Positions 24,819 to 38,548 of a stretch of 64,000 bases of DNA are shown in pieces. The number at the start of each line of letters is the position of its first letter. Position 1 is the first letter of the stretch. The stretch comes from Entomortierella parvispora E1425 (Eukaryota > Fungi > Mortierellomycota): NCBI GenBank assembly GCA_020891255.1, contig BQFW01000015.1:186001-250000 (forward strand), read 5' to 3'. The translations under genes were made by a program, and so were the position numbers. The notes beneath the pieces are model-generated. The model was given only the letters and a program-made list of their open reading frames with translations. It was not told the DNA's origin and searched no databases.

Positions 24819-25377
24819 ATGAACCTGGATAGATGCTAATGGCCAACATGTGGGCTTGGGCTTGTATCCTCATTAGTTGTAGAGGGGTCGGCAAGACTGT
24901 GGCTAGTCTTGTCAAACGTTTACAGTTGCTGTATCCAGAGATCTTCGGCCATCAAACGCAAGACGAGAATAATGAGCATGATGAAAATGGATGAATAAAT
25001 GAGGTTTTTTTTAATGTTCAAGTGGGTTAGTGGGTCAAGTGTGGTACAGATGCTCTCGTGACGCGTCCCTGGACTCTGTTCTTGGAGACGCACTGTCACC
25101 ATATCTCTGGTGACCTTTGAGGATTCCCTTGGCGACCAATAGGCGGCACTACCGGGGGGTCTTTTACCCATAGTTCTATCTCGCCATCATGGTCTTCCTT
25201 GCCTCTGTCTGCCCGCCTGAGCCGAAACTGTTGTGCTCTCATGCCGTGGAAACAATTTGCTTCACAAGATGTCTGAAACTGCCCAGCTGGGGTTCGACTG
25301 ATGGTGTACCTGGTGGACTGGCCAGTCAGATGACAGTTTTTTTTATTTTTTTTATGTCAGAGTCATTGGGGAAGAAG

Positions 25378-30372: not shown

Positions 30373-31030
30373 CACAGAGGGTTCGCTGGGGGGTGGGGCT
30401 GGGAAATGAGAGCGAGAGACGAAGGTGAGGTGGAGTTGAGAGAGGAGAAGAAAGAAAGCGGGCAGGGGATGCGGCGTTGGCTTTTTGATTTTTGGCAAAG
30501 CCAAACGAGCACCAGAGCCCGACTTTGTGCTTCTATTGCTCAGCACGGCAAGCGCAACATGGTCCTCCGTTGGCACGTTCGCTTGTTGACAGGGTCAAAG
30601 GCGCGGTGGGGCGGTGCATTCGCTCCATTGATGCCATCTACCTGCACTTGGTTCATTCATCTCGTCCATTAGCTTTTCGCAAATAGAAGCTGGCTCGACC
30701 TTCATTCCGTCCGAGGATTAGTTGCAGCAGATGTGCATGAGCTTGAATTCGACTGGATGGATTGTATTCTTGTCCTCGTGCAACAAAAGAGGGGGGATAA
30801 GGACGGCAGTGGAGAAAGAGGGCACTCCAGGAAGGCTGAAGGCAAAGGACAAGAAGGCCCTCCCTTCGAGGGAGAAGAAAGACAAAGACGCGCAGTGTGA
30901 CTGGATCTTTTCTTTTGTTGTTCCTGGGGGAATAGAGACACGGGCCAGCATGGACGCGCCCTGCCTTGTGCTCCTCCACGCCGCTTTTTCGTCCCTTCTT
31001 CCCTTCTTCTTTTCCCTCATTCCTCTGCTC

Positions 31031-33298
31031 ATGACCAACTCGTTGGTCGAATCAGCACTCGCGATCTGGCTCATTCAAGATGCCATTGCAGCCACCTTCC
31101 ACTTGAGCGACCTATACAACTGTGCACTCGTCTCCAGGGCCTGGAATAGGATCTTTACCCCGTCCCTCTGGAGGGTAGTCGACTGTCCCAATACCCCGAA
31201 GGTTCCCCAGGATCGGTTCTTGCTAGACCCCGATTCGATCTTGCATCAACCAAAGTTTTGTCGCCTAGTCCGAGAGTTGACAATCATGAACTATGGATAT
31301 CTGCCCTTCTTCCAGCCACTGCCACCAGCATCCGCTTCTCCTCCTCTCTCACCCATCAAGGAAGCCGGCGAAAAATCACCAGACCAACAAGGGTGCCGGC
31401 AATGGATCAATGGACCAGATCCTGCTTTCCCAAACCTTCAAGTTCTTGGATGGTTTCTCCCTTTGCTGGAGACATGGCCCCCAGTTGTCGAATATAATTT
31501 GTTACAGTTCCTGCAAGTTCATCAGGCTTCACTCCACAGTCTGTCGCTGGAGCTTTGGGGTCTGAACGATACCATCTTTGAGAACCTATGTTCTATCCTC
31601 GAGAACATGCCAAGCCTGCAGAGGGTTGCACTCGCCGGGTCCTGGATCCAGACCTCAAAACAGGTACAGCGGTTCTTTTGGGCATGTCGACATCTGAAAT
31701 CCACATGTCTGCCCCAAGAGAGCCATTCAACCGGTTGCATCGACAAGTATGGTAGAAGACGAGGCAGAGGACTAAGCACAAATGCAGCCGTTCGACTTTG
31801 CGTGTACTACAACTACAACAACCAGGAGCCCGAAGGTTTGTTTCCAGAGGAAGAGCCCGTCTGGACCCCAATCTTTGAGCCAACCCAGATTCGGTCTCTG
31901 AATCTGACGCATGAAGTAGAGCGCAAATTTTGGATCTACGTACCCGTGTTCAGAATGTGTCCATTTTTGGAGCGACTAGAACTGGAGGTCGAGGAGCTGG
32001 AAGGGATGACTCTGGTCCTGAGAGAATGCCTTCACTCATCTTGTCCACTGCTAAAGTTTCTCAAGATTACAAGGGAGCGCCAAGCTGAGCAGGCTGACCA
32101 AATTCCGTTGCACTGGTCTCTTGGACTGTTGTGTCCCAGTATTGCTGAGCAAAGAGGGAATGGAAAAACAAGTGCCATGGCGACGTTCAAGCCCAGCTCT
32201 CCAATCTATTGGGACGAGGATGTTGAAGTCAACCGAGATCTTATCTATGGAACGGGAACGACAGCATCCTTGACAACATCTACATCAAACTGGACCCTCA
32301 GCCAGCACATCTGTTCTGGATTTCGATTGAAGTCCTTTCTCTTAGATGGAAAGAGCCCCAGTAGAAACAAGATGGCCCACCCACGGTACGGTCGACCTTG
32401 GAACTATCTTTTGGATCATCACAGACAAACGCTGACAAACCTGGATGTTTCAGCGATAGTGATGCCGTTCCAGGAATTTGTCCACTTGGCCAGTGCAGAT
32501 GTCCAGATGCCTCATCTCCTGTCCCTGAGAGCTTTCATGGTCTTGACGCGTCATGAATGGAAATCCCTGGCAAGTGCAATTTTGGCGGAAGAGCGAGGTG
32601 GGGTCCTCTCTGGTCAACCAGAAGATCAAGATCCACAAGGTCTTTTACGACAAAGTCAGCGTAAAACAAAGCAAGCTCGGAAAGATGCCATACTGGAGAC
32701 TGTGAGGTTCCGACCCTGGACTGCGTGCCGAGGGCTTTTGAACCTGGACATGAAGATCGATCTGCAGGAGCCGAGGAGTAAGATGCAAAACTTGGAGTGG
32801 AACTACAAGACCTGCGACATGGTTCCCGAAAGGGCCGTGCTAGAATATATCGTGCACGAGATCAACCAGGCGGGCTCATTAGAGAAGCTGACCATGAAAT
32901 CTCGTGACATGCCATGGTCTCCAGTTTTAACCCTACCTGTCCCAGCCAGAAGGGCCACCACCACTACCACCACGCCTGCTGCTTCCTTTGCCGAAGGTGT
33001 TCAGATCGAGGACGAGTCTGATAGTGAGGACGACGAGCTCGACATTCTAGGGTACAGAAACCAGGCTAGAGCTGGTGGGTATTTGGATCAGTTTTCGAAC
33101 CTCCGATGGCTAAAAGAGGTGACTTGGCATCAGTACGAGATGACAGATTTGACTGTTCAGGACGCAGAGTGGATATTAGAGCATTGGCCACGCTTGTATC
33201 TTCTAGATGTTTCGCCCGAAATAGGTGCCACTGGAGCCGGCTTTGACCTGCTCGGAAAGAGAAGACCACTGTTGATGCAAAACTCTAATTGGTTTTAA
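31031..33298 (+). CDS. F-box/LRR (RNI-like) protein, single exon
   Basis: F-box-like ALAIWLIQDAIAATFHLSDLYNCALVSRAWNRIFTPSLW after ATG 31031, LRR-like repeats (PFLERLEL, LTNLDV) and the terminal WILEHWPRL motif typical of Mortierella F-box genes. Confidence 0.8.
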   Translation: MTNSLVESALAIWLIQDAIAATFHLSDLYNCALVSRAWNRIFTPSLWRVVDCPNTPKVPQDRFLLDPDSILHQPKFCRLVRELTIMNYGYLPFFQPLPPASASPPLSPIKEAGEKSPDQQGCRQWINGPDPAFPNLQVLGWFLPLLETWPPVVEYNLLQFLQVHQASLHSLSLELWGLNDTIFENLCSILENMPSLQRVALAGSWIQTSKQVQRFFWACRHLKSTCLPQESHSTGCIDKYGRRRGRGLSTNAAVRLCVYYNYNNQEPEGLFPEEEPVWTPIFEPTQIRSLNLTHEVERKFWIYVPVFRMCPFLERLELEVEELEGMTLVLRECLHSSCPLLKFLKITRERQAEQADQIPLHWSLGLLCPSIAEQRGNGKTSAMATFKPSSPIYWDEDVEVNRDLIYGTGTTASLTTSTSNWTLSQHICSGFRLKSFLLDGKSPSRNKMAHPRYGRPWNYLLDHHRQTLTNLDVSAIVMPFQEFVHLASADVQMPHLLSLRAFMVLTRHEWKSLASAILAEERGGVLSGQPEDQDPQGLLRQSQRKTKQARKDAILETVRFRPWTACRGLLNLDMKIDLQEPRSKMQNLEWNYKTCDMVPERAVLEYIVHEINQAGSLEKLTMKSRDMPWSPVLTLPVPARRATTTTTTPAASFAEGVQIEDESDSEDDELDILGYRNQARAGGYLDQFSNLRWLKEVTWHQYEMTDLTVQDAEWILEHWPRLYLLDVSPEIGATGAGFDLLGKRRPLLMQNSNWF

Positions 33299-33616: not shown

Positions 33617-34059
33617 GAGTGCCCGGCTTCACTTTGACAACAAAAATCAGCTTAACTGGCTTACCGTGTTTTCAGTCCCTATCCTCGTTCCTCAGAGGGG
33701 GCACTATAGTCAACTCTAGTGAGTTATCCTATTCCTTGCGATCCAACCCACCAAATTAGCTAAGAGTACACACTAGTCTGCAATGAAGGATACAGCAACC
33801 GCATGACAGTTTAAGGTTGTTCAACGTGCCCCTGCTCGCTTGCATGTTGTTCACACGTCCGCCATACCATGCCCTCGTCCTCATCAAATTACCGGCTTCC
33901 TTCCTCTGTCTCCCACATTCCTAACAACTTCGCGTCTTTCTCTCTCTTTTTTCTCTTTCCATTTTTTGTTCATTTCAGTGGTTCAGCAGCAACCAGCCAG
34001 CTCCATGCCTCCATGCCAAGTTTCCAATTATTATCAATAAACCAACAAAATGAGACTAT

Positions 34060-37000
34060 CTATGACTCCCTCTCCTCTCTTGCAGCCTTCCGATCTCTGC
34101 AGTAGTTGACCAATTGGTTCACAGTCCAAGAATGTTTCTTGAAAAGTGCTTCGAGCTCCATCATAGCATCTTGGAGGGCATCCTCGTGACTCTGGCCGCC
34201 GTCCTTTGCTCTGTTTTGGCTGGCAAGGTACTCGACCTCCTCGATAATCCGCCTTTTGTTGTTGAGCTGTTTCTGATGTTTCCTGGAGATTCCCAATGGT
34301 CTTTTCCCAGCCTTTTGACGCTCCCGCTCAAATTCCTGGTACTCTTCCCAGATTGCAGCCACGCTTCCAAGTCTGTAATTGACAGTAACGCCACCAGTTG
34401 TTACACTGGTGGTGGTCGTAGGAGCCGTGGTGGTAGTTGTGGTTGCGGTGCCGGTTGTTGTCGTGGACACAGTTGTCTCTGTCTGCACGGCAGGCATTGA
34501 CTTGAATGGCACGGGTTGACACTGTGGTTGAGACTGGGGCTGATGTTCGGCAGCTTGAGACCATCTCGGAACCCCAATTGCCAGTACTGGCGGCGCTTGT
34601 GCAAGTCTTCGAGGACTTGCAGGGATAGATTGCTCAGATTGGGCATCAATGGGAGGGCGCACCGGCAGAGAAGGAGTGAATCCTAAACCGGGTTGCCACG
34701 ATGGCGCTAGATATGGTTGCTGCCAGAAATTGCCAGCAAAGCCAGACGTATTGTGGCCAAGCTGGCTGATTATATAATCCAACTTGGATTCAATACGGGA
34801 AATGGTCTCCTTGAAATTATGGACGCCACAATCGACGACGGCATCCAGGTGCAGCATGGCTTGATCTAGATGCTCAGCTGCTGCCCACCGAAGCCCTTGT
34901 ATTTCACGCTTCATGATTTCGAAGCTCCCTGGTAGCCGTGTCATTATTTCGCCTTGGCGAGCGATAAGGCGTTGCTGGTCTTGAAGGACCATCTTCACAT
35001 TGGGGTGCATGTCTGTTGGCAGTACTGCCTCCTTTGTGCTCAATACTGTCGCCACCTGCTCCTTGAAGGCCAGAAAGGCCGGAGTCTCAAAAACCCCGAA
35101 AGCCAGCAACGGCGATTTCACGTTCGAGTGCTTGCACAGGTACTCAGCTGCGTCTTGAAGGATTACCCGTCGGAGGCGAAGTAGTGCCTTCAAAAAACAC
35201 TTTTTCGCCATTTCGGATTGTTGAGTATTGGCTGATACCATGCCTCGAATGCTTGAATCATACCGCAGAGGAGCAACATTTTGGGGCTGAGATGCTTCAT
35301 TGGCGTTTCTCTCCTCCATTTCTTGTATGCACTCCGCTTGCCATTCATTATAGTCGGGGGTGCCTGGAGGTCCGCATGCTGTCTCGATAAAGGGGAAAAT
35401 TTGTTGCTGCAGGTCGAGGCTCGGTGAGACCTCGTTTCGCTTGAGATGGAATGGAACCTCTCCACCAAGGAATCCAGCCAACTGAACTGCAAAATGGTAC
35501 GAGGGATCATCACCGTAGTGCTGGTCCAGTTTGGGAGTGTTTTGTTGCCAAGGGCCTGCCTTCCGGATTTCATCTCGTGCAACGAGCATCATCCTGGCCT
35601 CACTTGAACCACTATGACGGCCAGAATGAGTAATGTGACGGCACGTTACGCGTTGACGTTGGAAACACTTCCTCATGTTTTCCTCTTGAATCTCACAAGA
35701 GCCTTCATCATGTACGTTGGGCCAAGTGTGGATGAGCTTAACATCGAGCCAACTGGGGTCATCAAAGTCCGGCAGCGTTTCATGCTTAACCTGAAACAAT
35801 CGAGCAGGACATTAATAAGTAGAAATAGTGTCGATCTTGTCAGGGCTTCAACAATTCAAGCCAGAGCTGCAATATAACAGGGGAAATAGGGAAACAGAGG
35901 AGTCGGACAACCTACATGAAACAGGTCATAAAAGTAAAATCCAAGCGCACCAACACTGCAGCGGCGTACATCGGTGTGTCTGCATGATACACCATACAGC
36001 ATCTTGCCTCCTTGGTTGTTTTTGCCCTTGTGGAAGTTTGCCATCAAGAATACTAGGTTCTGAGTGCCTCCGATCCGACTGATAGAAGGATCCATGAAAA
36101 TATCCGAGTAATTCAAGCCTTGAAGGTCCTCGTCCCTCAGGAGCAATGCATGCCTTATTGCTAGCGAGAGGTGTAATCTCATCGAGGAAGAAGTTTCTGA
36201 CACGGGCTGTTGCCATGCATCCAAAAGACATCTATCAGTACAAGGATATGTAGGTGTGCATGTCAATATTCTTCAGCGTATGTTGCTTTTGCGCTTTTGC
36301 GTGGTCCTCTCTCTCTCTTTCTTCCTTTCTCTAGCACATACCTAATATGCTCCTCGATCGTGTATGTATTTCTTATTCCACAGGACGCAGACGAATTGCG
36401 ATGGTTGACGAGCTCACCGATTACAAGATCGTTGTTGTATTTTGAAAGAGTCTCCTTGATCGCCTTACTCTTTCGTAAATGCTCTGCTTTGTTAGGATCA
36501 GTGATACGATTGCTTTGCCGTCTTTGCAAATGGACGATTGCTTTAAGTGCTTGATCCATTGTTGCACTTTCGCAGAGCACCTGCAGGACCTTCGAGCCAT
36601 CCTCTGCTGCTGGAATAGATTCCAGCACTAGTGGCCGAGTCCAAAAAGATGATGCATAGAGCATAGACGGTAACAAGACAGCAAGACGATATGTTAGAGT
36701 GAGGTAGGCTTGCCAAGGTTAGTACTGGTTCTAATGCAACCAATTCCCATAACACTCACCCTGACGCAAATCAACTGGTCGACGTTTTGCCTTCGATTCA
36801 GACGCCACCAACGCAAGGGCTACCCTCACATCCTTCGTTTCGTTTGCTCTGAAGATCTTTGGGATTCTCCTCTTGAACATGAAATCCTTGAAAAATAAAA
36901 GGACCTTCTCTTCGTAGACCTCATACCGGGCGTCCTGTTCAGTCATGTAAGTCTTGTCGCAAAACTCCTATACGAAATGAGAACCGGTACATGTTCGGCC

Positions 37001-37839
37001 AACGAGAATTATTTTATAATAACCACGACCAGATATTAATTCCGGATCTGCAGATCTGCATTTTTTTTACTGCATTATACCCTGCGTTTTTACCTTGAAG
37101 AACTTGAGGTAAGTCAAGTACGCTTCCTTGGTGTTCCGTGCCAAGTTTTCGTGCTCGTAAGCCATGCCCTGAAGGCGGAGTGCCGTTGCTCGCTGATGTA
37201 ATTCGCGTGCTGTTGAACTACTACCGTCTTGAGAAACTTCCTCTTCCACCACAAAATGGCTGATGGCAAGTGTCGACAGCTCCTTCATCAACGCACAAAA
37301 CTCTTCTGGAAAATGGCGTCAGATGTCAACGTGCTGAGACGCAAACAGTCCACCTCAATTTCTTGTTTAATTTGATACATACGTGCAACCTTGGCCTTGA
37401 GGGATGACTTTGGACGTCCTCGCGTTCTTTTTGGGGGCCTTTCCGTTCTTTCTGCGGACCAAGCCTGCACTTGCAGAGCCTGATCTGATTCCGATTCGGA
37501 TGCCGTTTCTTCTTGCAGAGGTAATGCATCAGGCCCTCGCCTTCTCTTCGGCGGCCGATTCTGAGGCGATTGATCCTGTTTTGATTCAGAGGACGATGAA
37601 GAATTTTCTGCATCTTCTGCATCTTCCGTCAGATGTTCTTCAAAAGTCGATACTGCACTAGGAGGCACGTGAAGCTTGAACCACTTTTGTGAAGGCGCTG
37701 TCCGCTGGGTCCTTTCAGGTGCTAATTGTAAGGATGTCAGTCCCACTGCTGGTTCGAGTGATTGTCGAGATAATGGTGCTTGTTGGATAGGTCCTTTCTG
37801 TGGCGGTTGTTCAAAGGGCCGCGCTTGCGACATTGACAT
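34060..37839 (-). mobile_element. Crypton-type (CryptonF / Ndc10-domain) tyrosine recombinase gene, 6 exons, about 1069 aa, no lesions
   Basis: Exons 37839-37383, 37305-37094, 36967-36760, 36627-36342, 36231-35916 and 35790-34060, all GT-AG with consistent phases (3210 nt). Motifs LLLRDEDL, GKNNQGGK, RHTDVRRCSVGALGFY, ITHSGRH, AGPW, QHYG, LAGF, QQQIFPFIE, RRVILQDAA and a GCR1_C-like tail (SVAAIWEEY...KRRIIEEV). Confidence 0.85.
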
Positions 37840-38548
37840 GGCTCTCTTCTCAGTTGTCTGATCTCGAATTGATAGGACGGGGCCTCTAGGTTGAGTGTGG
37901 TGTGTTATGATGGTATGATGTGTGTGGTTTGTGCAGGGAAGTGGGGAGAGGGAAGTGAAGTGCATGCGCGAATGTTCGCGTGCCTGGGAACTTGGGAATT
38001 ATCGTTGCACGTGACAAAAAAAAAGTGAATCGCCAGCGCGTCTGCCCCGGGCCCGTGAAGCGACAGCAAGGATTTTTTTTGTTTTACAGTACTGTCAAGG
38101 TCGTCGTCCCTGGCGACTTGGTCGCTTGTGTCAGTCCGCATGGACAAGAATTGGTAATTACTGATTACTTCTGTGGGTAACTCCACATCAGTGCCAACGT
38201 CCTGAGCTCTATTGGTCTTTGAAGCTTCATTCACTTGGATTCCGAGCCCTTCGAAAGCGGCGAATCACGAGGAAGTGGTTGTCCCTTGGTGGGGCAGAAT
38301 GGTCGAAGGGAGACAAAAAAAGCACATCGAGTAAGATCGTGTGCAAATATATAATGGATTCACGTTTTTGAAATGCGAAGCAGGAGCGTGTTGGTAGGAG
38401 GGAGAAAGGGCGCTTCACATCAATTAGCCTATGTCAACAAGGATGCTCGTCTGGGTAGCTCAGTACGGTTTTATTATCAGATATTCATTTCAAGTAAACA
38501 TTCCTGCATAGGACAGTGTCGCAAAACACAATGATGCGAATAAACCAA

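What the first reader, a model, noticed from the sequence alone, without database searches (positions are those of the whole stretch)
34060..37839. Apparently intact, intron-rich Crypton tyrosine recombinase with a full catalytic set
Six ORF-track fragments join through five canonical introns into one 1069-aa frame with no stop or frameshift. The putative catalytic residues are all present: Arg (LLLRDED), Lys (GKNNQ), His-x-x-Arg (THSGR, about 35617-35631), Trp (AGPW) and the Tyr nucleophile (QHYG, 35515-35517), followed by a GCR1_C-like domain. Cryptons are a poorly studied DNA transposon class, and yeast Ndc10, Gcr1, Msn1 and Hot1 are domesticated relatives. This copy is either potentially active or domesticated, and it sits amid recent rearrangements.
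Basis: partly seen in the sequence, partly recalled or inferred. Interest (0 to 1): 0.75.

Follow-up and report, generated by a model that had tools for sequence, protein, structure and literature searches.

The report
Intact low-copy Crypton recombinase gene
This is an intact six-exon gene for a Crypton-type tyrosine recombinase in the soil fungus Entomortierella parvispora; it is already in GenBank as a hypothetical protein, it has one diverged sister copy on another chromosome, and it is an ordinary member of a known transposon class with no sign of recent movement.

Summary
Six minus-strand exons join through five GT-AG introns into a 1069-aa frame. That frame is letter-for-letter GenBank GJJ78379.1 (EMPS_10738, Entomortierella parvispora E1425).

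- **Family and fold:** The protein passes Pfam NDC10_II (54.9 bits; cut-off 26.3). A model of its 92.6%-identical sister copy matches Ndc10, Flp, Cre, XerH and lambda integrase (Z 10-20).
- **Catalytic residues:** R420, K458, H548, R551, W574 and Y585 are all present. They are about 90% conserved across 150 family representatives.
- **C-terminal domain:** The GCR1_C assignment is only sub-threshold and rests on an intermediate homologue.
- **Copy structure:** The gene lies in a sharply bounded 4.2-kb unit (33819-38022). A second intact copy sits on contig C6 at 92% nucleotide identity, with unrelated flanks.
- **Selection:** The coding sequence has no indel, against 17 in non-coding parts, and dN/dS is 0.34. 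The window copy carries about four times more derived amino-acid changes, some at conserved positions.
- **Mobility:** I found no terminal direct repeats, young copies or empty site. A different Crypton family in the same genome shows all the marks of recent movement.

Verdict: a new member of a known kind. An old low-copy Crypton (about 0.5) and a host-retained recombinase (about 0.4) cannot be separated here. Interest is modest.

The parts
33819..38022 (-). 4.2-kb repeated unit: the gene plus 183 bp upstream and 241 bp downstream. This is the candidate Crypton element.
   Evidence: The only long match in the genome is G000:C6:101698-105936, at 91.8% identity. Its ends are sharp and its flanks are unrelated.
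37383..37839 (-). Exon 1 (aa 1-152). It is low-complexity and basic, with an AT-hook-like KRTRGRPK at 37408-37431.
   Evidence: Script splice check, motif search, pLDDT <50 in the model.
37094..37305 (-). Exon 2 (aa 153-223), the start of the N-terminal core-binding-type helical domain.
   Evidence: There is a weak Phage_int_SAM_4 hit at aa 201-257 (E=0.018 in P0011, 0.16 in P0158).
36760..36967 (-). Exon 3 (aa 224-292).
36342..36627 (-). Exon 4 (aa 293-387).
   Evidence: The long intron 3 (36759-36628) is supported by P0003 and P0008.
35916..36231 (-). Exon 5 (aa 388-493), the first half of the catalytic domain, with Arg420 (36137-36135) and Lys458 (36023-36021).
   Evidence: NDC10_II profile positions 25-115. 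Conservation: R 81/90, K 77/86.
34060..35790 (-). Exon 6 (aa 494-1069 plus stop). It holds the second half of the catalytic domain, a long coiled helix, a Thr-rich linker and the C-terminal helical domain.
35515..35631 (-). Active-site box: His548 and Arg551 (THSGR, 35631-35617), Trp574 (35550-35548) and the Tyr585 nucleophile (35517-35515).
   Evidence: Conservation: H 84/91, R 85/92, W 89/96, Y 95/104. In the Cre alignment, model residue 578 pairs with Cre 319, which puts W574 opposite Cre 315.
34063..34407 (-). C-terminal domain (aa 955-1069; two short hairpins plus four helices). It is distantly GCR1_C-like.
   Evidence: pLDDT about 90. GCR1_C E=0.035, profile 6-72/80. Homologue P0053 passes the GCR1_C cut-off in the aligned stretch.

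Best explanation
The locus is a CryptonF-lineage DNA element. It is a 4.2-kb unit whose single six-exon gene encodes a two-domain tyrosine recombinase: an N-terminal core-binding-type domain and a Cre/Flp-like catalytic domain. An AT-hook-bearing tail lies in front, and a coiled-coil and a small helical, GCR1_C-like DNA-binding domain follow. Inferred mechanism, by analogy with Cre/Flp and the Goodwin model for Cryptons: Tyr585, helped by Arg420, Lys458, His548, Arg551 and Trp574, forms a 3'-phosphotyrosyl link. The unit is excised as a circle and re-integrated by site-specific recombination at a short matching target. Shown here: the intact gene, the fold, the conserved active site, and two unlinked copies with sharp common ends, which means the unit moved as DNA at least once. 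Not shown here: any catalysis, excision or recent insertion. The family is old and low-copy in this genome. Both copies kept their reading frames under purifying selection, and the window copy is the more relaxed one.
For: - Gene model and identity to GJJ78379.1.
- NDC10_II 54.9 bits in P0158 and 66.3 bits in P0011, against a cut-off of 26.3.
- Catalytic hexad about 90% conserved in 150 representatives of a family of 973 clusters, and conserved in paralogues of this genome that are 28-45% identical.
- AlphaFold model of the sister copy, pLDDT 85-98 over residues 200-660. It matches Ndc10 (Z 19.9), Flp (Z 15.4, rmsd 3.8 over 232 residues), Cre (Z 13.7), the XerH catalytic domain (Z 12.4, rmsd 3.0) and the lambda integrase core (Z 9.8, rmsd 3.0).
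- A second copy on C6 with sharp ends and unrelated flanks, introns retained.
- The unit has the same size and layout as a demonstrably recent Crypton family in the same genome: 4,152 bp, at least 8 copies at 99.7-99.97% identity, TCATT terminal direct repeats, a head-to-tail dimer, and NDC10_II plus GCR1_C both above cut-off.
- Excess of derived changes in the window copy, 48 against 11, p = 1e-6.
- Crypton biology from PMC3212892 and PMC9977147.
Against: - There are only two copies, 8-10% apart at neutral sites. There are no young copies and no decayed fragments; the one 113-bp match on C16 is part of a 99% patch copied from the C6 locus, flank included.
- No 4-6-bp terminal direct repeat is visible at the shared boundaries.
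- Both copies lack any indel or stop in 3210 nt of coding sequence, against 17 indels in 950 non-coding nt (P about 1e-25), and dN/dS is 0.34. That is more than a dead-on-arrival transposon copy would show and fits host-level selection.
- Low-copy relatives with the same exon junctions occur in Podila, Linnemannia and Dissophora, which is compatible with vertical descent.
- GCR1_C is below threshold.
Confidence: 0.5

Rival explanations
1. Host-retained (domesticated or semi-domesticated) Crypton-derived recombinase. On this reading it is a cellular gene of Mortierellaceae that kept its active site. It was duplicated once in E. parvispora, and the window paralogue is now under relaxed constraint. 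It would act in trans on host DNA, in programmed recombination or chromatin/DNA binding, rather than move itself.
For: - No coding indels or stops in either copy, despite about 10% neutral divergence and 17 non-coding indels.
- dN/dS 0.34 overall and 0.23 in the recombinase domain. The C6 branch carries only 11 derived amino-acid changes.
- Low copy number with no decayed fragments.
- No terminal direct repeats.
- Relatives at 53-70% identity, about one per species, with identical exon junctions in four other genera.
- Precedent: Ndc10, Gcr1, Hot1 and Msn1 derive from CryptonF (PMC3212892).
Against: - The known domesticated relatives lost the catalytic residues (PMC3212892), whereas here all six are kept.
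- The duplicated segment is a tight 4.2-kb unit with unrelated flanks on another chromosome. That looks like transposition, not segmental duplication.
- The window copy's derived changes hit conserved columns.
Confidence: 0.4
2. Non-functional relic: a dead Crypton copy that merely happens to be still open.
For: - The window copy carries R573P next to the catalytic Trp, plus R425Q, M417L and Y525C at conserved columns.
- Its NDC10_II score is lower than that of the C6 copy, 54.9 against 66.3 bits.
Against: - The chance of no stop after about 75 neutral substitutions is about 0.05. The chance of no indel is far lower at the non-coding indel rate.
- All six catalytic residues are intact.
- The estimated branch-specific dN/dS is about 0.4-0.5, not 1 (derived).
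Confidence: 0.07

Closest known systems
CryptonF elements (Goodwin 2003; Kojima & Jurka 2011, PMC3212892; active CryptonF-1_cRei, PMC9977147)
   Same: A single intron-containing gene of about 4 kb that encodes a tyrosine recombinase with the R-H-R-Y core, followed by a C-terminal DNA-binding domain. There are no terminal inverted repeats. Copy number is low. The host is fungal, and 'Zygomycota' are among the known hosts.
   Different: The C-terminal domain does not reach the GCR1_C threshold. No 4-6-bp terminal direct repeats could be found. There are only two old copies and no evidence of movement.
Co-resident CryptonF family of E. parvispora (e.g. G000:C8:2273118-2281423, C12:208012-212165, C7:880685-884838)
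   Same: Same genome, same unit size (4.15 against 4.2 kb), the same NDC10_II recombinase with the same intron between the two catalytic halves, and the same catalytic motifs.
   Different: That family has at least 8 copies at 99.7-99.97% identity, TCATT direct repeats, a tandem dimer and a GCR1_C domain above threshold. Its protein is only about 28-33% identical to this one.
Budding-yeast Ndc10/Cbf2 domains 1-2 (PDB 4ACO, 3SQI, 6GYP)
   Same: It is the best structural match (Z 17.6-19.9) and belongs to the same Pfam family, NDC10_II.
   Different: Ndc10 is a single-copy kinetochore protein whose catalytic site is not preserved (PMC3212892). Here the full active site is present.
Cre, Flp, XerH and lambda integrase (prokaryotic, phage and 2-micron tyrosine recombinases)
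   Same: The two-domain fold. Also the order and spacing of R..K..HxxR..W..Y: R551 to W574 is 23 residues, as in Cre R292 to W315 (Cre numbering from my own knowledge), with the alignment offset.
   Different: There is no detectable sequence similarity by PDB sequence search. The protein also has about 190 extra N-terminal residues and about 360 extra C-terminal residues.

Membership tests
Pfam NDC10_II (PF16787) | Score above the curated gathering cut-off of 26.3 bits | tested here: met
   P0158 (identical to the window protein) scores 54.9 bits, E=9.4e-15, residues 402-708. Exon 6 alone scores 27.8 bits.
Tyrosine recombinase superfamily | Two-domain Cre/Flp/integrase fold | tested here: met
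   Model of the 92.6%-identical sister copy P0011: Flp Z 15.4 (rmsd 3.8 over 232 residues), Cre Z 13.7, XerH Z 12.4 (rmsd 3.0 over 168), lambda integrase core Z 9.8. The window protein itself was not folded.
Tyrosine recombinase superfamily | Catalytic Arg, Lys, His-x-x-Arg, His/Trp and Tyr nucleophile | tested here: met
   R420, K458, H548, R551, W574 and Y585 are present. Each is conserved in 90-93% of family representatives. Residue-by-residue superposition was not available.
Tyrosine recombinase superfamily | DNA cleavage and strand exchange through a phosphotyrosine intermediate | not testable with these tools
   Needs biochemistry.
CryptonF | C-terminal GCR1_C DNA-binding domain | tested here: inconclusive
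   E=0.035, 14.8 bits (cut-off 23) on the last 113 aa, covering profile 6-72/80. E=0.97 on the full protein. The locus is absent from the genome-wide GCR1_C hits. Homologue P0053 passes (24.7 bits) in the stretch that aligns to residues about 971-1035. The ESM Atlas gives only a lead, at 0.85.
CryptonF | Short (4-6 bp) terminal direct repeats and no terminal inverted repeats | tested here: not met
   I saw no shared 4-mer across the two junctions of the window copy, and only TTGG in the C6 copy, when I read the junction sequences printed. With two copies at 92% identity the ends are uncertain by a few bases, so this is weak negative evidence. No terminal inverted repeats are seen in the junction sequences.
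CryptonF | Mobility: several copies at unrelated sites, insertion polymorphism, excision | tested here: inconclusive
   There are two copies at unrelated sites. There is no empty site in this genome.
Domesticated Crypton-derived genes (Ndc10/Cbf2, Gcr1 type) | Catalytic site not preserved | tested here: not met
   All six catalytic residues are retained.
Domesticated Crypton-derived genes (Ndc10/Cbf2, Gcr1 type) | Single-copy syntenic orthologue across species | not testable with these tools
   No Mortierellaceae genome DNA other than G000 could be reached.

The most novel reading that the evidence does not exclude
This may be a Crypton-derived tyrosine recombinase that Mortierellaceae have kept as a host gene with its chemistry intact. 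It would be a eukaryotic cellular site-specific recombinase, conserved across genera and held under purifying selection in two paralogues, that performs programmed DNA rearrangement rather than self-mobilisation.
Probability: 0.25. Interest if true: 0.7.

Novelty: new member of a known kind. Interest (0 to 1): 0.3.

Why it matters
Cryptons are among the least studied DNA transposons, and activity has so far been seen directly only in Chlamydomonas (PMC9977147). This locus adds little new on its own. It is an already-annotated hypothetical protein that can now be named a CryptonF-lineage recombinase. Its value lies in the contrast inside one culturable fungus. One family is old and two-copy, selectively maintained, and has a full active site. 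Another family is clearly young, with TCATT target repeats and tandem dimers. That pair would make a practical system for asking what separates a mobile Crypton from one on the way to domestication, which is the route that produced yeast Ndc10 and Gcr1.

Tried and rejected
- **Short intron 3.** The 51-nt alternative (AAG acceptor, 1096 aa) was rejected because homologues lack the 27 extra residues.
- **'1 TAG' in the C6 copy.** This is not a lesion. It is the intron-5 acceptor read in frame, and the C6 copy is intact.
- **C16 113-bp match as a solo element end.** Rejected: it belongs to a 288-bp 99% patch that also includes C6 flank.
- **RIP-like mutation.** Rejected: 160 transitions against 83 transversions, with no C-to-T/G-to-A excess typical of RIP.
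- **PDB sequence searches.** Exon 6 and the family profile found nothing relevant.
- **First AlphaFold run.** With 32 rows, many of them exon fragments, it was too poor in the catalytic domain (pLDDT 40-58) and was not used.
- **Profile of the C-terminal domain.** It did not reach the bona fide GCR1_C domain of the co-resident family.
- **tRNA or Rfam feature as an integration target.** None found.
- **Empty-site search within the genome.** Negative.
- **NCBIfam.** No hit.
- **Earlier scan notes.** Nothing at this place. Only two unchecked first-reader titles were found elsewhere in the genome.
- **Tools and limits.** A Pfam scan of the whole 150-row alignment exceeded the size limit.
- **Joined model.** My own spliced translation was never sent to a search or fold tool. 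Exons were searched by reference. Full-length searches used the public proteins P0011 and P0158, which the tools returned and which turned out identical to the spliced models. The joined CDS was built only inside scripts, for the frame check, dN/dS and comparisons.
Full report
**Organism and public record.** The window is G000:C15:186001-250000 of a 38.9-Mb, 20-contig assembly. The closest full-length relative found by the word search, P0011, is 'hypothetical protein EMPS_04069 [Entomortierella parvispora]'. It lies on a contig of 2,436,474 nt, which is the length of C6. Its 90% cluster holds one more protein, P0158 = GJJ78379.1, 'EMPS_10738', which UniRef names 'Ndc10 domain-containing protein'. 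P0158 is 1069 aa long and lies on a contig of 2,802,632 nt. The genome announcement (PMC8759367) reports strain E1425, an N50 of 2,802,632 bp, and AUGUSTUS gene calls made with RNA-seq-derived transcripts.

- The six minus-strand ORF pieces are present.
- Joining 37839-37383, 37305-37094, 36967-36760, 36627-36342, 36231-35916 and 35790-34060 gives 3210 nt and 1069 codons with no internal stop.
- The five introns are 77, 126, 132, 110 and 125 nt long and all are GT..AG.
- The translation is identical to P0158.
- The same model applied to the C6 copy is identical to P0011.
- All five junctions are crossed without gaps by homologues from other genera: P0003 (Podila-like, 67% identity over 629 residues with no gap), P0008 (Dissophora ornata) and P0002 (Linnemannia elongata).
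- A shorter intron 3 would add 27 residues that these homologues lack, so it is rejected.
- All indels between the two genomic copies fall in introns 2, 4 and 5 or in the untranslated ends.

**What the protein is.**
- *Family.* P0158 passes Pfam NDC10_II at 54.9 bits (cut-off 26.3), residues 402-708. P0011 scores 66.3 bits. Exons 5 and 6 each hit their half of the profile. A weak Phage_int_SAM_4 signal lies at residues 201-257, where a core-binding domain would be expected.
- *Family size.* The exhaustive search with P0011 found 973 clusters at E<=1e-3, 392 at <=1e-10 and 47 at <=1e-30.
- *Active site.* In a 150-row alignment of the best hits (A2), conservation is: R420 81/90, K458 77/86, H548 84/91, R551 85/92, W574 89/96 and Y585 95/104. 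The same residues are kept in paralogues of this genome that are 28-45% identical. The intron between the two catalytic halves sits at the same place in those paralogues.
- *Fold.* An AlphaFold model of P0011 on that alignment has pLDDT 85-98 over most of residues 200-660. Foldseek and VIA-align 2 rank Ndc10 domains 1-2 first (4ACO, Z 19.9). Next come Flp (Z 15.4, rmsd 3.8 over 232 residues, model 375-706), Cre (Z 13.7, model 213-573 against Cre 43-314), the XerH catalytic domain (Z 12.4, rmsd 3.0) and the lambda integrase core (Z 9.8, rmsd 3.0). In the Cre alignments, model residue 578 pairs with Cre 319. That offset puts W574 opposite Cre residue 315, which I recall as the catalytic Trp of Cre (my own knowledge, not a tool result).
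- *Limits.* The window protein itself was not folded; P0011 is 92.6% identical, with no difference at the six catalytic residues. PDB sequence searches found nothing.

**The rest of the protein.**
- Residues 1-150 are disordered and basic, with an AT-hook-like KRTRGRPK.
- Residues 756-837 form a long helix.
- Residues 840-953 are low-complexity and rich in Thr and Gln.
- Residues 955-1069 form a confident small domain of two hairpins and four helices.
- That last domain is highly conserved among close homologues.
- It reaches only E=0.035 (14.8 bits; cut-off 23) against GCR1_C, although it covers profile positions 6-72 of 80.
- It is not among the 34 GCR1_C matches in the genome.
- An intermediate homologue, P0053, passes the cut-off (24.7 bits) in the stretch that aligns to residues about 971-1035. 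More distant relatives such as P0079 carry clear NDC10_II plus GCR1_C.
- I therefore call this domain GCR1_C-like and the membership inconclusive.

**Copies and boundaries.**
- The genome holds exactly one other long match: C6:101698-105936, at 91.8% identity over window 33819-38022, with sharp ends and unrelated flanks.
- A 113-bp match on C16 belongs to a 288-bp 99% patch that continues into the C6 flank. The next 129 bp of the C6 flank are 99% identical to C10. The C6 neighbourhood is therefore a mosaic of recent patches, and the C16 piece is not an element end.
- The unit retains its introns, so it moved as DNA.
- Reading the junctions, I found no convincing 4-6-bp direct repeat at the shared boundaries.
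- There is no tRNA gene or Rfam feature nearby.
- There is no empty site elsewhere in the genome.

**Selection.**
- Both copies are intact. The coding sequence differs at 150 of 3210 sites (4.7%) and non-coding parts at 93 of 950 (9.8%).
- There are 17 indel events in non-coding parts and none in coding sequence, where 57 would be expected (P about 1e-25).
- Nei-Gojobori estimates are dN 0.034 and dS 0.100, giving a ratio of 0.34, or 0.23 in the recombinase part. There is no RIP-like bias.
- I polarised the 79 amino-acid differences with close outgroups. This gives 48 window-derived, 11 C6-derived and 20 ambiguous changes (binomial p = 1.2e-6).
- The window-derived changes include R425Q (R in 76/90), M417L, Y525C and R573P (R in 69/95, next to W574).
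- The window copy is therefore the relaxed one, with a rough branch ratio of 0.4-0.5 against about 0.1-0.15 for C6 (my estimate). It has not been drifting freely, because about 75 neutral substitutions would leave it stop-free only about 5% of the time.

**Context in the genome.**
- NDC10_II matches at 49 or more exon-level places and GCR1_C at 34.
- One other family shows every mark of recent mobility. Its unit is 4,152 bp, with at least 8 copies at 99.7-99.97% identity on six contigs. Each full copy is flanked by TCATT, and a head-to-tail pair on C8 shares one TCATT. Both NDC10_II (E=2.7e-10) and GCR1_C (E=6.6e-9) are above cut-off.
- This matches the published picture of CryptonF: short terminal direct repeats and target-matched integration (PMC3212892; PMC9977147).
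- The unit studied here has the same size and layout but none of the signs of youth.

**Interpretation.**
- Firmly supported: an intact CryptonF-lineage tyrosine-recombinase gene with a complete, family-typical active site, in a 4.2-kb unit that was copied once to another chromosome.
- Open: whether it is still a transposon. The unit structure, the family it belongs to and the decaying window copy argue for an old low-copy Crypton (about 0.5). The long-term protection of both reading frames, the lack of end repeats and fragments, and low-copy relatives with identical exon structure in four other genera argue for a host-retained recombinase (about 0.4). A dead relic is unlikely (about 0.07).
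- The test that would separate the two leading readings is cross-species synteny and strain polymorphism.

**Novelty and procedure.**
- CryptonF elements in fungi, including 'Zygomycota', are described (PMC3212892). No paper in the searched library links Cryptons to Mortierella. The gene is publicly annotated only as hypothetical. The finding is a new member of a known kind and of modest interest.
- My own joined model was never sent to a search or fold tool. Exons were searched by reference, and full-length work used P0011 and P0158 as returned by the tools.

Noticed in passing
G000:C8:2273118-2281423 (L035/L036); also C12:208012-212165 (L037), C7:880685-884838 (L038), and C13, C14, C15:1.71 Mb: This is a young canonical CryptonF family. 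Its unit is 4,152 bp, with at least 8 copies at 99.7-99.97% identity. Each copy is flanked by the 5-bp direct repeat TCATT. A head-to-tail tandem pair on C8 shares one TCATT. NDC10_II and GCR1_C are both above the Pfam cut-off.
   Followed up: partly
G000:C6:101399-101816 (L026/L027): The flank of the C6 copy is a mosaic of 99% patches. C6:101529-101816 equals C16:108370-108657, and C6:101399-101527 equals C10:884360-884488. These look like recent small ectopic copies or conversions.
   Followed up: partly
window 38092-38287: A dispersed repeat of about 145-200 bp lies 70 bp outside the element's upstream end. At least 5 other copies (C9, C5, C1 x3) match at 74-82% identity. Its nature is unknown.
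   Followed up: no
G000:C5:1183534-1279614: A cluster of about 14 GCR1_C domain matches lies within about 100 kb, several per open frame and without NDC10_II. It may be an array of Crypton-derived DNA-binding genes.
   Followed up: no
G000:C6:90804-91772, C6:728959-729927, C9:540006-540974, C11:1250837-1251805: A further multi-copy NDC10_II family gives the best Pfam score in the genome (62.8 bits), with identical scores at four loci. Related copies lie on C1, C4, C5 and C7. One copy is only 10 kb from the C6 sister copy.
   Followed up: no
G000:C2:1583817-1587512 (L011) and C11:39512-43207 (L012); C1:1251816-1255502 (L009): A third Crypton-like family has two copies at 99.9% identity and a third at 91%. 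The third copy has Cys in place of the first catalytic Arg.
   Followed up: partly
window 24890-25216: A short repeat at about 90% identity is also present 4.4 kb from the C6 sister copy (C6:110351-111079). It is not collinear with the element.
   Followed up: no
window 30722-33298 (+): An 858-aa open frame with an F-box-like domain (E=7.9e-6) lies directly downstream of the element. It would be a useful marker for a synteny test.
   Followed up: no
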